Shown in pieces: positions 32,106 through 38,468 of a stretch of DNA of 57,765 nt. The stretch covers positions 1,543,754 to 1,601,518 of the forward strand of contig BFEA01000043.1 in assembly GCA_003427395.1 (NCBI GenBank), written 5' to 3'. Origin of the DNA: Chara braunii (lineage: Eukaryota > Plantae > Charophyceae). Position 1 is the stretch's first letter. Every line of letters starts with the position of its first letter. A model generated the notes under the pieces. It saw only the letters and a program-made list of their open reading frames with translations. It was not told the DNA's origin and did no database searches. The translations under genes were made by a program, and so were the position numbers.

Positions 32106-32951
32106 TGGCATACTTTTACAATTTTGAAAAGGCGTGGGTAGACATGGGTGATGATGATCTCCATGTGCGTGTTTGTGTGTGCCTTTGCAAATATGCATGT
32201 TGATGTGATGTCTGTGCTGGACTCAGTTTGGCTCCTTCCTCTTCTCTGTGTGCATCATTGTGCTCACGAGTGCCCCTTGGAGCCATGAGCACAAGTCATA
32301 ATAATGACTCGCAGGGAACAGAGGCTTGGCAGCATGCGACATGCAATCTTCAGGTGATGAAGAAGATGGAGGTGGAAAATCAGGGAAGGAGGAAGAGGAG
32401 AAGAGAAAGAAGAGCAGAAAGGGAAGGAAGAGGAGAAATAGTAGGGAGGGTAAGAGGGGGAGGAAGAGCAGGGAGAGGTAGAGTAGGGAAAAGGAGGAGG
32501 AGGAGGAGGAGGAGGAGGAGGAAGAGTATGGAAAGGAGGAGGAGGAGGAGGAAGAGGACCAGGAAGTGGAGGAGAAGGAAGGCAACAAAGGCTCGAAGAG
32601 CAGACGCTTCGCGTCTGAATCCCACGGGCTCGTCAGCAGAGTTGCTCCGTCCAAGAAATCACAGGACCCAGAGAGAATCGTGACCAACGCCCAGAGAATA
32701 TGTCGACGAGAGCGCAGCACTTCGTGTGTCCTCTTACGCACGGCGCACCATAACCAAGTAGTTGCTTCGCCAATGAAGGATTTCGTGCAACAGAATGAAT
32801 CAAAGAACTAAACACGTTTCCAATACCTACAGCGGCTCCATCTAATGCGATTGTTGCACAGCCCGCTCCAAAGTTAATTGTGGCTTATAAATAGTAATAT
32901 GGGGTGATAATGGTCGATTGATTTTCATGTCAATTTACTCTGATTTTGACT

Positions 32952-33024
32952 CAAGGTGACAGGATTCGAACCTATGACCCTCTGGACCCAAAACAGATGC
33001 GCTACCAGACTGCGATACACCTTG
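32952..33024 (-). tRNA. trnP: Mitochondrial-type tRNA-Pro(UGG), nuclear copy (NUMT)
   Basis: CAAGGTGTATCGCAGTCTGGTAGCGCATCTGTTTTGGGTCCAGAGGGTCATAGGTTCGAATCCTGTCACCTTG; cloverleaf like plant mt trnP. Confidence 0.9.
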
Positions 33025-35323: not shown

Positions 35324-35764
35324 TGATGACAGAACAAAATAGAATAGTAAATGCAGCTGTCCCCCGATGAGGAGAAGACAGCTTGCATATATATTGTCAC
35401 ATAACTATGAACTAAAAGAGCACATTTTGCGAAACAAATGGTAAAGATTAAAAAACAAGACAAAGATGAGGGGCATACTGAAACTATTCATTTCTCTTGT
35501 TCTTCTTTTAACTCCCCTTCACCGTGGCTCTCACACACAAGGCTCGACACGTTGATGAAGTTGAGTGTGAGCTGCCCGCATCCCCGTGCCATAACGGCCC
35601 ACTTGTACGCCGTGAGAAAGAGGCAGAGTAAAGGGGGAGGTGATACAGGGAAGAGAGATGAAGAGAAGACAAACAAAGAACGAAAAAGGGAAAGGAAGGA
35701 TAAGAAAAGGCTCATGAATGAGTCTGTCCTTGACGACAGAGAGGACACACATTGTAAGGATGAG

Positions 35765-36219
35765 GTGAATGGGCACATGGAAGACCTAGCTGAGCACTCT
35801 CGGCACAACAATTGCCACAACGGGCCTGAGCATGTCCAACATACACTATGACAAATGGCATGCCGATTGCAGGCCAAAACGAAGGAAGAACGCTCACCAC
35901 AAAAGACCTCAGCACAACAATTGCCACAACGGGCACTAAGCATGTCCAACATACACTTTTGACAAATGGCATGCCGATTGCAGGCCAAAACGAAGGAAGA
36001 ACGCTCACCACAAAGGACGATGCCTTCAGTATAGCGCCCATGGCCACGAAATGGACATATAGTGTCCAGATGCAGAGGGTGCCTGCAGTCAGGAACGGAG
36101 GGACAGTCCTCTACACACACAGATGCAGAAACCATGTCGTTGTAGTGATTGTGACAGAGACGATGGTGGCAACAACCGAGTGTAACAGTGTCTGTAGCTG
36201 TGCAAAGGAGAATGTCACA
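35765..36219 (-). pseudogene. RING-like zinc fingers (two; second partly duplicated) in the PLE extension
   Basis: CDILLC...LGCCHHRLCHNH...CPSVPDCR and LCGERSSFVLACNRHAICQKC...CPF; ~110-bp internal tandem duplication. Confidence 0.65.
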
Positions 36220-36267
36220 GGGTGTTGGCACATTGTCTTGCTGCAGCATGGGGCCAGAGGAATGGTC

Positions 36268-36703
36268 TTCAACATAAAAGAGATTGCAGACAGTTTGGTG
36301 GGGCAAGAAAACAGCATCATTATGTAAGAAATCAGTAATATTACTCATGGCATGGGCCATGATGTCGTTGTCCCACGACTCCCAATGGTCAGAGGCACGT
36401 ACAATGGCCAGATCTGTGCACAATGCAAGCAGAGATGTGGGATGGAGGATTGAACCCCTCACCTGCTCGAGCATTGCGTAGCTCAAGTTGGCGGTCCCTC
36501 GTTGCTACTTGTAGGACAGCAATGGTAAGGCCTCTTTCCTTGGTATAATTACAATCCTCTGGTTGTAGGCGGGGGAGATCAGCATCAAGTTGAAGGGCGA
36601 TAGCAAGGAAGTCTGATGGTGTATAAAATGGGCGGTGGAGAATGTGAAGACAAATATTAGTTGCAGTCAGACCACAGAGATTGGTGAGGGTCTCAGGCTG
36701 GTG
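36268..36703 (-). pseudogene. Josephin/ataxin-3-like cysteine protease (MJD deubiquitinase fold) domain
   Basis: NLCGLTATN (Cys codon 36674-36676), PFYTPSDFLAIALQLD, NYTKERGLTIAVLQVA, CIVHRSGH (His 36404-36406), frameshift, AIVRASDHWESWDN (Asp 36370-36372), NLFYVE. Confidence 0.75.
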
Positions 36704-38468
36704 TGCCGGATGCTGGCCAACGATTTGCAAATCACCCAGCTGGTGTTGCAAGCCCAAAAGGTCTTGGGTTGTTTGATGGTCAGTCATTTGCAGATCACCC
36801 ATGTGGTCTGCGCGTGGAGGGGCACAAATTTGTGATTCGTCCAAATGATGCTGGTCAGCCATTTGCAGATCCCCCATGTGGTCTTCGCCTTGTGGGGTTA
36901 ATTGCAATCCCGACAGATCATGTTCCAATCCCTCAAAGTTTTGGGGCCGCATCCTGAGCAGGGACTGTTTCGGGAATCGGGAGTGTACTCTGGGCAGGGT
37001 CCACATCCTGTTGTACGGGTGGAACATCTAACGCTGAAGGGCATAAGACATGATGTCATGGCTGCCTGCAGGCAGCTGGACTGTCTGTTGGAGGCATAGG
37101 AGTGTATATTGCGGTTTGGAACAAAGGAACCGCAACAACCTGTGGAACAGGCTCAGAGAGAATTGGGCCAGACAAAGAAACAGGCTGCTGATCCCCGGAC
37201 AAGTGACCATGTTGCGGATGTCGTTCATGATACACAATAAGGGCAGTAGTGGTGTTGCAAACAGAAGATGAACATGTCCCTGACAACGAAGGTGGAACAA
37301 TTGGAACAATGGAAACCAGAGAGTCTGTTCGCAAGTGAGATCGCGGAGGAGATGGGGACGACGAGGAGCAACGCAGTCGTCTGCGGCCAAGCACAAAAAG
37401 AGATGAAAGGGGGGCGGACTGGGCAGGATTTCGAAACAAATGACGTGATTGTCAGAGAGACTGTGATGTGCTTTGCGCTGGAGTTGCAGTAGAGGAAGCT
37501 GTAGCAACAAAAAGTATAGTACAGGGGACCGCAGCAGAGGAAGTTGTAGCAGCAAAAAGTGTAGTACAGGGGACTGCAGCTGAGGAAGCTGTAGTGAGAA
37601 CTGTAGTAGTGAGAACTGTAGTAGTGGAAACTGCAGTAGCAAAAACTGCCAGAGTGAAAGTCGGAGCTGTAGAAAGTGTAGCGGTGGAAACCGCAGCATC
37701 AAAAATTACTGCAGCAATGGGAACTGCTGTAGCAGAAACTGCTGGAGTGAAACCGGAGCTGTATAAACTGGAGCAGTGGAAACTGGAGTAGTCGAAGCTG
37801 CAGGAGCAGAAACTGCAGCTGAGGAAACCGCAGCTGTGGAAACTACAGTCGCAACAGATGAGCAAGCAGGAGCAGGACAAGAGCGACGCGGGGGCTAAGA
37901 ACAAAGTGGATGATTCAGGGACCATCACAGCATGCGTCGGAACCACTGAGAGAGATGTGCCACATGCGTAGGATAGCGACGCTGGCAGGAGCGCATGTAG
38001 CAGGTATACCCTTTAGCAAGGGTTGCTGGGGAATACCCACGAGAAAGCATGTGGCGAGCAAGTGATGTTGCCGCAGTTCGAAAATCCTGCCACTTGTTGC
38101 AGATTTGTTTAAATCTGGTCAATTGTCCAATGAACCCTCCCGCCGGTTGATGGGAAGGGATGTTGGAGGTTGCACTTGGATAACGAATGACAGGAAAATC
38201 CCAAGCAGCTGTTTTATCAAACATGCTCATGCGAAGCGAGCCATCAGAACGGACCTGTAGATGCATACCTAAAAAGGTACACGAGCCATCTGTCGCTGTA
38301 GTTTCCTTCCACTCAAGCCCATAGTGCTCCTGAGGAGGAAGGAGGTAATTGCCCCCATGAAAGAACATCATCAATGAGGCGCAATCACACCATGCACAGA
38401 AGGAAAAAGAGTGAACATAACTACTGTACACAACGAGTAGACAAAATGAAATGTACACATGTATATAC

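What the first reader, a model, noticed from the sequence alone, without database searches (positions are those of the whole stretch)
35765..38385. Penelope-like retroelement carrying a ubiquitin-editing module: Josephin-like protease plus RING fingers after the RT
Seen: on the minus strand, a PLE RT catalytic motif and thumb (RLIDDVLSW...GQLTRFKQICN) is followed by an Ala/Thr/Val/Pro linker. Then comes HQPETLTNLCGLTATN-x-PFYTPSDFLAIALQLD-x-NYTKERGLTIAVLQVA-x-CIVHRSGH/AIVRASDHWESWDN-x-NLFYVE, then two Cys/His RING-like clusters. Established (from memory): the ataxin-3 Josephin domain reads HEKQEGSLCAQHCLNN, EYFSPVELSSIAHQLD, NMDDSGFFSIQVISNAL, ICNYKEHWFTVRKLGKQWFNLNS, YSIFVV. These are the same blocks in the same order, with a Cys-His-Asp triad at 36674-36676, 36404-36406 and 36370-36372. 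The frameshift after GH fits a small deletion between two GCCATT microhomologies. Josephin-related proteases are reported in Dualen/RandI non-LTR elements; I do not know of them in PLEs or paired with RINGs. Inference: the ancestral element encoded one polyprotein with a deubiquitinase/processing protease and E3-like fingers, possibly for self-processing or countering ubiquitin-based silencing. This copy is a pseudogene.
Basis: partly seen in the sequence, partly recalled or inferred. Interest (0 to 1): 0.9.

Follow-up and report, generated by a model that had tools for sequence, protein, structure and literature searches.

The report
Decayed Chlamys retroelement with Josephin–RING tail
This is a broken, 5'-truncated copy of a high-copy Penelope-like retrotransposon of the alga Chara braunii whose protein ends in a Josephin-like protease and two RING-like zinc modules, an architecture already published in 2021 (Chlamys-1_cBra), so it is real but not new.

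Summary
On the minus strand lie an RT motif C and thumb (38381-37928), a low-complexity linker, a Josephin-like domain (36736-36240), two Cys/His modules (36228-35727), a stop (35714-35712) and a 3' tail ending in (TA)n at 35387.

Josephin (PF02099) is the only Pfam family hit by five family members. An intact relative (P0004:48-205) passes the curated cut-off (27.1 vs 26 bits). The Cys, His and Asp positions are kept in all four copies.

The Cys/His region is an internal tandem duplication of one RING-spaced module. Fold support for RING is weak.

dN/dS among three copies is 0.36 (shifted-frame controls 0.75-1.3), so the module was under selection.

Relatives are Chara braunii sequences. Craig et al. 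[quoted passage not shown]

The scan's first readers flagged this family 39 times elsewhere in this genome.

New here: the RING-like reading of the "unknown" motif, the selection signal, and sense-strand family transcripts (if the libraries are stranded in the usual way). Function is untested.

The parts
38355..38381 (-). RT motif C (RLIDDVLSW). The 5' truncation point of this copy lies just upstream, at about 38385-38400.
   Evidence: Frame-0 translation. tblastn to copy A at 3041-3073. No similarity to copy A further upstream.
37928..38347 (-). RT C-terminal part and thumb, in frame 1. It is out of frame with motif C, and a TGA follows at 37925-37927.
   Evidence: 57% protein identity over 137 aa and 70.7% nucleotide identity to copy A. 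Most RNA reads lack 4 nt at about 38336.
37455..37924 (-). Low-complexity Ala/Thr/Val/Pro-rich linker built of 15/30/45-nt tandem repeats. The reading frame here is uncertain.
   Evidence: Tandem Repeats Finder rows 37486-37854. Three-frame translation.
36737..37454 (-). Spacer of unknown function. It includes imperfect HMGDLQM-type repeats (about 36740-36960) just before the protease.
   Evidence: Translation. L003 and P0006 carry the same repeats. RNA reads show repeat-number variants at 36700/36772 and 36935/36836.
36404..36736 (-). Josephin-like domain, N-terminal half (frame 1). Catalytic Cys codon at 36674-36676, His codon at 36404-36406.
   Evidence: Pfam Josephin is the only hit (E=0.12 here; 0.0011 and 0.0073 for the L002 and L003 halves; 4.3e-6 and 27.1 bits for intact P0004:48-205). 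ESM Atlas features score 0.93 with 176 of 256 shared, and 25 of 30 hits are Josephin.
36403..36404 (-). Break point. This copy lacks 11 nt that L001, L002 and L003 all carry. The loss shifts the frame between the His codon and the rest of the domain.
   Evidence: DNA alignment A5.
36240..36402 (-). Josephin-like domain, C-terminal half (frame 2). Asp codon at 36370-36372; NLFYVED block.
   Evidence: Alignment A1 with intact P0004. Threaded alignment of four copies.
36037..36228 (-). RING-like Cys/His module 1. Ligand spacing: C-x4-C-x9-C-x2-H-x2-C-x2-H ... C-x3-C ... C-x-H-x2-H-x4-C-x2-(C). The last Cys is Arg in this copy.
   Evidence: Alignment A3, 31-34% identity to module 2.
35727..36033 (-). 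RING-like Cys/His module 2 (C3HC4 spacing in intact copies). Here it is split by a 111-nt tandem duplication (35799-36018) with an indel.
35712..35714 (-). Stop codon of the element's ORF. It is at the same place in L002.
35387..35711 (-). 3' untranslated tail ending in (TA)n. Its core (35524-35636) is conserved.
   Evidence: Alignment A4 with L002, L003 and the tail next to copy A. A predicted long stem has 3 compensatory pairs among 4 sequences (weak).

Best explanation
**What it is.** Window 35387 to about 38395 (minus strand) is a 5'-truncated, mutated copy of a Chlamys-type Penelope-like retrotransposon. This type has an N-terminal GIY-YIG endonuclease followed by the RT. The copy belongs to, or is very close to, the family published as Chlamys-1_cBra of Chara braunii.

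**Architecture.** In the intact element one long ORF continues past the RT thumb. It runs through a low-complexity linker into a Josephin-type papain-fold cysteine protease, and then into two tandemly duplicated RING-like zinc modules. A short 3' tail follows, ending in (TA)n. The RT presumably uses this tail for target-primed reverse transcription.

**What is shown.**
- The domain order.
- The Josephin profile match.
- Conserved Cys, His and Asp.
- RING-type ligand spacing.
- Purifying selection on both parts.
- High copy number.
- Family transcripts, sense-strand if the RNA libraries are stranded in the usual way.

**What is inferred.**
- About 45%: the module handles ubiquitin. The Josephin domain would remove ubiquitin from the element's own protein or RNP, or from chromatin at the insertion site. 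The RING-like modules would recruit an E2 or a substrate. This would be a self-carried deubiquitinase-plus-ligase pair that shields the element from ubiquitin-dependent degradation or silencing.
- About 20%: a role as a cis-acting processing protease.

**This copy** is dead. It has a 5' truncation, at least three frame breaks, in-frame stops, an internal 111-nt duplication and lost zinc ligands.
For: **Anatomy.**

**RT and element type.** The RT fragment is 57% identical in protein and 70.7% in nucleotides to window copy A, which starts with a GIY-YIG motif (Pfam E=0.0026).

**Josephin.**
- It is the only Pfam family hit for P0004:48-205 (E=4.3e-6, 27.1 bits against a cut-off of 26).
- It is also the only hit for the L002, L003 and P0006 N-halves and for the window's own N-half.
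- ESM Atlas features put Josephin first (0.93, 176 shared features).
- The Cys, His and Asp positions and their spacing are kept in all four copies; in L003 the Asp-Asn pair reads Asn-Asp.

**Cys/His region.** The two modules are homologous to each other, with RING-like ligand spacing. ESM Atlas fold hits are RING families at TM 0.50-0.54.

**Selection.** dN/dS is 0.36-0.37 (95% CI 0.24-0.56) among the window copy, L002 and L003, for both the Josephin and the Cys/His halves. It is 0.75-1.3 in the shifted frames.

**Other copies.**
- The module, stop and tail are contiguous in L002 and L003.
- L003 is a shorter 5' truncation of the same 3' part, as expected of a retroelement.
- L003, P0002 and P0006 are Chara braunii sequences.

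**Abundance and expression.** The family is very abundant in DNA run X1. Oligo-dT RNA reads cover it mainly on the strand expected for sense transcripts.

**Literature.** Chlamys-1_cBra has a ~1,800-aa ORF whose C-terminal extension has weak homology to Josephin plus a second motif of conserved C and H (PMC8557442).
Against: - Within my own data, RT and Josephin are joined only in this one decayed copy. L002 and L003 do not reach the RT.
- Copy A, which has an RT, lacks the module. The tail beside copy A is separated from its ORF by a (GA)n tract with a small assembly gap, so it may not belong to A.
- The published consensus was not available to align.
- Sequence searches of the PDB found no Josephin, with single sequences or with a profile.
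- The AlphaFold2 model of the Josephin-like domain failed (pLDDT 37.6), so the fold is untested.
- Pfam finds no RING family in P0001 even at E<=10.
- Structural matches to RING fingers are individually insignificant.
- No enzymatic activity has been tested.
- The strandedness of the RNA libraries is assumed.
- Most RNA reads are only 90-95% alike, so they come from other copies.
Confidence: 0.85

Rival explanations
1. The Josephin/RING segment is not part of the retroelement. It would be a host-gene pseudogene or an independent insertion that happens to lie next to an RT fragment.
For: Copy A in the same window has an RT but no such module. L002 and L003 carry the module without an RT. About 1.2 kb of low-complexity or unknown sequence separates the RT and the protease here.
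Against: - The module is on the same strand as the RT, and the element's 3' tail follows it.
- Module plus tail recur at about 80% identity in other loci, as nested 5' truncations.
- Every part of the interval is highly repeated in the genome.
- The whole-library protein search found no free-standing host protein with this module. It found only fragments and one chimeric gene model.
- The published family consensus has RT and module in one ORF.
Confidence: 0.03
2. The protease is real but acts as a cis-acting processing protease. It would cut the polyprotein, for example releasing the RT/EN from the zinc modules, and would not act as a deubiquitinase.
For: From general knowledge, papain-fold proteases in viral polyproteins often do both jobs. 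The protease is preceded by a long repetitive linker that could hold cleavage sites. The triad is conserved and under selection.
Against: From general knowledge, Josephin-family enzymes are known only as deubiquitinases. No ubiquitin-like Gly-Gly site is evident in the linker. Pairing with RING-like modules points to ubiquitin chemistry.
Confidence: 0.2
3. The Cys/His region is not an E3-type RING pair. It would be a different zinc-binding module, for example one that binds nucleic acid or chromatin and helps target choice, as proposed for PHD or CxC motifs in other Chlamys elements.
For: - No Pfam RING hit.
- Each module has about four extra conserved Cys/His (C-x-H-P-P-H-P ... C-P-x-C) beyond the eight of a RING.
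- The first ligand pair is C-x3/4-C rather than C-x2-C in most copies.
- The authors of the family description left it as 'unknown'.
Against: - The spacing C-x9-C-x2-H-x2-C-x2-C/H ... C-x2-C fits the RING cross-brace.
- The model shows the beta-beta-alpha core.
- Nearly all weak PDB rows, and most named ESM Atlas rows, are RING fingers.
Confidence: 0.3

Closest known systems
Chlamys-1_cBra, Penelope-like element of Chara braunii (Craig, Yushenova, Rodriguez & Arkhipova 2021, PMC8557442)
   Same: - Same host species, judged by the nearest relatives.
- N-terminal GIY-YIG type PLE.
- Long ORF with a C-terminal extension holding a Josephin-like motif, then a motif rich in conserved Cys and His.
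- High copy number and frequent 5' truncation.
   Different: Probably nothing in kind. I could not align to the consensus because the supplements are not held. This copy is a truncated pseudogene. The paper leaves the second motif 'unknown'; here it resolves into two homologous RING-spaced modules.
Dualen/RandI non-LTR retrotransposons with a Josephin-like cysteine protease (Kojima & Fujiwara 2005, as cited in PMC8557442)
   Same: A retrotransposon ORF carries a Josephin-like protease domain, which has been proposed to interfere with protein degradation.
   Different: These belong to a different retroelement class, with APE and RLE endonucleases. No RING-like modules are reported with the protease. 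Not compared by sequence here.
Ataxin-3 / JOSD Josephin deubiquitinases (Pfam PF02099)
   Same: Profile match over model positions 4-121 of 157. The Cys and His regions are conserved, and an Asp occupies the place of the third catalytic residue. From memory, the His-to-third-residue distance of 15 is the same as in ataxin-3.
   Different: Very divergent. Most copies score below the Pfam cut-off, and there is no phmmer or profile hit in the PDB. The domain is embedded in a transposon polyprotein. Asp stands where ataxin-3 has Asn. The fold has not been verified.
Ubiquitin-editing proteins that combine a deubiquitinase with an E3 module (e.g. A20: OTU domain plus zinc fingers; from memory)
   Same: A cysteine deubiquitinase fold and zinc-finger ligase-like modules in one polypeptide.
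   Different: An analogy only. The protease family is different (OTU versus Josephin), there is no homology, and no activity data exist for the element.

Membership tests
Penelope-like elements, Naiad/Chlamys clade | PLE-type RT (motif C plus a characteristic thumb) | tested here: inconclusive
   Only motif C and the thumb survive in this copy. They are 57% identical to copy A's RT. Pfam has no model that hits this part. No RT phylogeny was made.
Penelope-like elements, Naiad/Chlamys clade | GIY-YIG endonuclease N-terminal to the RT | tested here: inconclusive
   It is lost from this 5'-truncated copy. The related copy A (505-1725) begins with a GIY-YIG match at E=0.0026 and 18.5 bits, below the cut-off of 22.6.
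Penelope-like elements, Naiad/Chlamys clade | Dispersed high-copy family with frequent 5' truncation | tested here: met
   The window copy and L003 are truncated at different points and share the same 3' end. Word depth in DNA run X1 is very high.
Chlamys-1_cBra | C-terminal extension with a Josephin-like motif followed by a conserved Cys/His motif, in Chara braunii | tested here: met
   Domain order. The nearest relatives are C. braunii proteins and a C. braunii scaffold. Description in PMC8557442.
Chlamys-1_cBra | Sequence identity to the published consensus | not testable with these tools
   Supplementary files are not held. No Repbase access.
Josephin (PF02099) | Profile match at or above Pfam's gathering score | tested here: met
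   The intact relative P0004:48-205 scores 27.1 bits against a cut-off of 26 (E=4.3e-6). The window's own N-half scores only 12.7 bits (E=0.12). L002, L003 and P0006 score 16.6-19.2 bits. Josephin is the only family hit in every case.
Josephin (PF02099) | Catalytic Cys, His and a third polar residue (Asn/Asp) in order | tested here: met
   The Cys in N-x-C-G-L-T-A-T-N and the His in G-H are kept in all four copies. The Asp in W-E-x-W-D is kept in three; L003 reads W-N-D.
Josephin (PF02099) | Papain-like Josephin fold | tested here: inconclusive
   The AlphaFold2 model from a 6-row alignment had pLDDT 37.6 and was unusable.
Josephin (PF02099) | Deubiquitinase activity | not testable with these tools
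   Needs biochemistry.
RING finger | Eight Cys/His ligands with C-x2-C-x9-39-C-x1-3-H-x2-3-C/H-x2-C-x4-48-C-x2-C spacing | tested here: met
   Module 2 of L002 and L003 fits if CPFC is taken as the first pair (C-x2-C, x21, C-x2-H-x2-C-x2-C, x34, C-x2-C). In the repeat register both modules start with C-x3/4-C (C-x2-C in P0004).
RING finger | Profile match to a RING family | tested here: not met
   No Pfam family for P0001 at E<=10.
RING finger | Cross-brace beta-beta-alpha fold | tested here: inconclusive

The most novel reading that the evidence does not exclude
The 'unknown' Cys/His motif of Chlamys-1_cBra is a tandem pair of working RING-type E3 modules. Together with an active Josephin deubiquitinase it would form a transposon-encoded ubiquitin-editing unit that the element needs for retrotransposition, for example to escape ubiquitin-dependent degradation or to rewrite ubiquitin marks at (TA)n target chromatin. 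That would be a host-interference strategy not shown for any retrotransposon.
Probability: 0.3. Interest if true: 0.6.

Novelty: already known. Interest (0 to 1): 0.25.

Why it matters
Transposons that carry their own ubiquitin-system enzymes are rare, and none has been studied biochemically. A Josephin domain joined to RING-like modules in a very abundant, apparently transcribed element of a large streptophyte-alga genome is a good test case for how retroelements deal with host protein-degradation or chromatin-ubiquitin pathways.

As a discovery, though, the architecture is already in the literature. This locus is one dead copy among very many. Its value is confirmatory, plus three small additions:
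- the RING-like tandem-repeat reading of the second motif;
- a purifying-selection signal on both domains;
- sense-strand family transcripts, if the libraries are stranded in the usual way.

Tried and rejected
**Searches that found nothing useful**
- Pfam on the raw window ORFs at E<=1: nothing. The domain is split by the frameshift; trimmed halves later gave weak Josephin hits.
- phmmer and a family profile against PDB sequences: no Josephin or RING hit.
- Search restricted to the last 57 residues of P0002, to pull out long polyproteins: only P0002 itself. No intact ~1,800-aa product is in the protein collections.
- Whole-library phmmer gave only three true relatives. The two chitin-binding repeat proteins, P0003 and P0005, are spurious.
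- Profile search for more homologues added only P0006.
- Scan of JGI metagenome contigs with P0001: no relative.
- The paper's supplements are not held.

**Structure**
- AlphaFold2 of the Josephin-like domain with the only alignment available (6 rows): pLDDT 37.6. I did not search with it.
- Complex prediction was not used. No binding claim is made, and no eukaryotic ubiquitin reference is offered.

**Loci**
- The DNA around P0002 could not be fetched because the gene range is 305 kb.

**Ideas considered and rejected**
- The hammerhead-bearing tandem array at 38469-39035 is not this element's own terminal repeat. The ribozyme is on the opposite strand here but on the same strand beside L003.
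- The RNA-read 'joints' at 36700/36772 and 36935/36836 are not introns. They have no canonical ends and lie in the HMGDLQM-type repeats, so they reflect repeat-number differences among copies.

**Not done**
dN/dS used codons threaded by tblastn, with stops and gaps left out.
Full report
**What is in the sequence**

Translating the minus strand of 35400-39200 in three frames gives, in order:
- RT motif C (RLIDDVLSW, 38381-38355, frame 0).
- The RT C-terminal part and thumb (38347-37928, frame 1), ended by a TGA at 37927-37925.
- An Ala/Thr/Val/Pro-rich stretch made of 15/30/45-nt tandem repeats (37854-37486).
- About 700 nt of unassigned sequence that ends in HMGDLQM-type repeats.
- Two Cys/His clusters (36228-35727).
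- A stop at 35714-35712.
- A 325-nt tail ending in ...ATATATAT at 35387.

**The element type**

A second element lies at 505-4084 on the plus strand (copy A).
- Its RT thumb is 57% identical in protein and 70.7% in nucleotides to the one in the finding.
- Its long ORF begins with a GIY-YIG motif (Pfam E=0.0026, below threshold).
- An endonuclease N-terminal to the RT is the permuted arrangement of the Naiad/Chlamys clade of Penelope-like elements.

Copy A has a Pro/Ser-rich C-terminal extension but no protease or Cys/His module. A 116-nt stretch 78% identical to the finding's tail lies at 4585-4699. It is separated from A's ORF by a (GA)n tract with a small assembly gap, so I do not rely on it as proof that the tail belongs to A.

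**Relatives**

A phmmer search of 1.84 billion representative proteins with the C-terminal half (35893-36420) found only three real relatives:
- P0001, a 197-aa fragment, 70% identical.
- P0004, a 261-aa fragment, 45% identical. It carries an uninterrupted protease domain and the start of the Cys/His region.
- P0002, a 1,706-aa Chara braunii gene model (CBR_g53950). It is a HEAT-repeat host protein with a 54-residue piece of the element fused to its end, most likely an annotation chimera.

A profile search added P0006, Chara braunii CBR_g37361.

The DNA behind these gave three more copies:
- L002 is an ENA contig. The protease, both Cys/His modules, the stop and the tail lie in one frame with a single stop codon.
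- L003 is C. braunii scaffold BFEA01000037.1:2560310-2580978. This copy is truncated further 3' than the window copy and has the same module and tail at 80% nucleotide identity.
- L001 is a divergent subfamily.

The best DNA holders of the stretch are runs of 2018 from one organism. The Chara braunii relatives are consistent with that, so the window is most likely C. braunii.

**Is it Josephin?**
- Pfam finds nothing in the raw ORFs, because the domain is cut in two.
- On trimmed pieces Josephin (PF02099) is the only family hit each time:

| Piece | E-value | Bits |
|---|---|---|
| P0004:48-205 (intact) | 4.3e-6 | 27.1 (cut-off 26) |
| L002 N-half | 0.0011 | 19.2 |
| P0006 | 0.004 | 17.4 |
| L003 N-half | 0.0073 | 16.6 |
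| Window N-half | 0.12 | 12.7 |

- All these matches start at profile position 4-6 and run in register, to position 42 for the window, 83-84 for L002, L003 and P0006, and 121 of 157 for P0004.
- Protein-language-model features of the window's own N-half give a Josephin cluster first (0.93, 176 of 256 features). Of the 30 nearest clusters, 25 are Josephin. P0004 gives the same family.
- Across the four copies, the Cys in N-x-C-G-L-T-A-T-N, the His in G-H, and the Trp 11 and Asp 15 residues after that His are conserved. In L003 the Asp-Asn pair reads Asn-Asp. From memory, ataxin-3 has the same His-to-Asn distance.
- Against this, no PDB Josephin is reached by phmmer or by a six-sequence profile.
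- The AlphaFold2 model failed (pLDDT 37.6), so the fold itself is untested.

I rate "Josephin-like cysteine protease" at about 85%.

**The Cys/His region**

Aligning its two halves from all copies shows they are homologous repeats, 31-34% identical (A3). The shared pattern is:

C-x3/4-C-x9-C-x2-H-x2-C-x2-(C/H)-x10-14-C...C-x-H-P-P-H-P-x3-C-P-x-C

The central part has the ligand order and spacing of a C3HC4/RING cross-brace. About four extra conserved ligands suggest a third zinc site per module.

Other evidence for and against RING:
- Pfam gives no RING hit.
- An AlphaFold2 model of one module (pLDDT 66) has the hairpin-plus-helix core.
- Foldseek against the PDB gives no row with E<1, although nearly all of its 41 weak rows are RING fingers.
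- The ESM Atlas fold search returns several RING families at TM 0.50-0.54 over 50-58 residues.

"RING-like" is therefore plausible (about 65%) but not established.

**Selection**

I threaded the codons of the window copy and of L003 onto L002 by tblastn, leaving out stops and gaps.

| Frame | dN/dS (Nei-Gojobori) |
|---|---|
| Proposed frame, all three pairs | 0.36-0.37 (bootstrap 95% CI 0.24-0.56) |
| Josephin half alone | 0.35-0.40 |
| Cys/His half alone | 0.31-0.37 |
| Same alignments shifted by one base | 0.75-0.87 |
| Same alignments shifted by two bases | 1.1-1.3 |

Part of the divergence among copies therefore arose in lineages where both domains were under purifying selection. This is what one expects for coding parts of an active element.

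**Lesions of this copy**
- A 5' truncation at about 38385-38400.
- Four extra bases at about 38336 relative to most RNA reads.
- A TGA after the thumb.
- Unresolved frame changes in the repeats, and a stop at about 37030.
- An 11-nt loss right after the catalytic His codon, relative to L001, L002 and L003.
- A 111-nt tandem duplication at 35799-36018 with an indel.
- Substitutions at two ligand positions (CPFC is CPFR; ECxxxC is EGxxxC).

**Expression and abundance**
- Every bin of 35400-38400 has very high summed word depth in DNA run X1.
- Three oligo-dT RNA runs of the same organism cover the RT and the module at low to moderate depth.
- Most of these reads are only 90-95% alike, so they come from other copies.
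- First mates lie 5-10 times more often on the + strand. In the usual stranded libraries that means RNA of the minus strand, which is sense for the element. The library type is assumed, not known.

**What is already known**

Craig, Yushenova, Rodriguez and Arkhipova (Mol Biol Evol 2021, PMC8557442, section 9) describe three types of Chlamys PLE in Chara braunii. The first is Chlamys-1_cBra. [quoted passage not shown] The authors note the parallel with Dualen.

That is this architecture, in this organism.

The first readers of this scan flagged RT-Josephin(-RING) elements 39 times elsewhere in the same genome. Those notes are unchecked and I do not count them as evidence.

**Mechanism**

Shown: the domain order, the conserved catalytic-type residues, selection, abundance and family transcription.

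Inferred:
- The Josephin domain acts on ubiquitin conjugates and the RING-like pair recruits an E2 or substrate, protecting the element's protein or RNP or editing ubiquitin marks at target chromatin (about 45%).
- It is a cis-acting processing protease (about 20%).
- The zinc modules are for nucleic-acid or chromatin binding rather than ligase function (about 30%, not exclusive of the first two).

None of this can be decided without biochemistry.

**Verdict**

Novelty: already known. Interest is low to moderate. The increments here are the two-repeat RING-like reading of the "unknown" motif, the dN/dS signal, the exact nature of the frameshift, and sense-strand family transcripts if the libraries are stranded in the usual way.

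Noticed in passing
window 38469-39035 (+ strand); ribozyme at 38891-38946: A tandem array of units of about 100-130 nt abuts the truncated 5' end of the element.
- It contains a type III hammerhead match on the + strand (Rfam RF00008, 34.1 bits, below the gathering score of 48.5, E=1e-4; CUGAUGA and GAAAC cores present).
- It is the most abundant sequence in the interval in DNA run X1.
- It is heavily covered by RNA reads of the opposite orientation to those on the element, with many back-joints typical of tandem or circular forms.
- A 92-nt unit of it also sits directly 5' of the truncated copy in L003 (9923-10014), but there on the same strand as the element.
- It is probably an independent retrozyme-like repeat that shares a (TA)n target.
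   Followed up: partly
window 505-4700 (+): A second, different Chlamys-type PLE copy. It has an N-terminal GIY-YIG, an RT interrupted by an assembly gap of Ns (about 2500-2800) and by frameshifts, and a Pro/Ser-rich C-terminal extension. It has no Josephin/RING module. A (GA)n tract with a small gap follows, then a 116-nt tail 78% identical to the finding's tail.
   Followed up: partly
window 35524-35636 (-), 4585-4699 (+); L002:910-1040; L003:11212-11345: The 3' tail core is more conserved between subfamilies (78%) than the RT coding sequence (70.7%). It is predicted to form one long interrupted stem, with 3 pairs showing compensatory changes among 4 sequences. It may be the RNA element that the RT recognises. 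The evidence is thin.
   Followed up: partly
window 39219-39331 (-): A weak tblastn match to the same part of the PLE RT (after motif C and into the thumb), upstream of the hammerhead array. It is a fragment of yet another PLE copy.
   Followed up: no
window 9796-9895 (-), 41279-41379 (+), 47147-47254 (+); 32951-33024 (-): Three U6 snRNA matches above Rfam's gathering score (67.5-89.9 bits) and one tRNA within 57 kb. The multiple U6 copies may be retrocopies, as another first-reader note suggests.
   Followed up: no
P0002 (Chara braunii CBR_g53950), residues 1652-1705: An annotated 1,706-aa HEAT-repeat host gene model ends in 54 residues of the element's Josephin C-half. The gene range is 305 kb. 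This is most likely an annotation chimera with a transposon fragment taken as the last exon.
   Followed up: partly
L001 (ENA ERZ27272674 contig k141_2089077), 195-1079: A divergent subfamily, 45% protein identity. It has an uninterrupted Josephin-like domain. A TGA stands at the position of the first Cys of RING-like module 2, and the module continues in frame beyond it. The source organism of this metagenome contig is unknown.
   Followed up: partly
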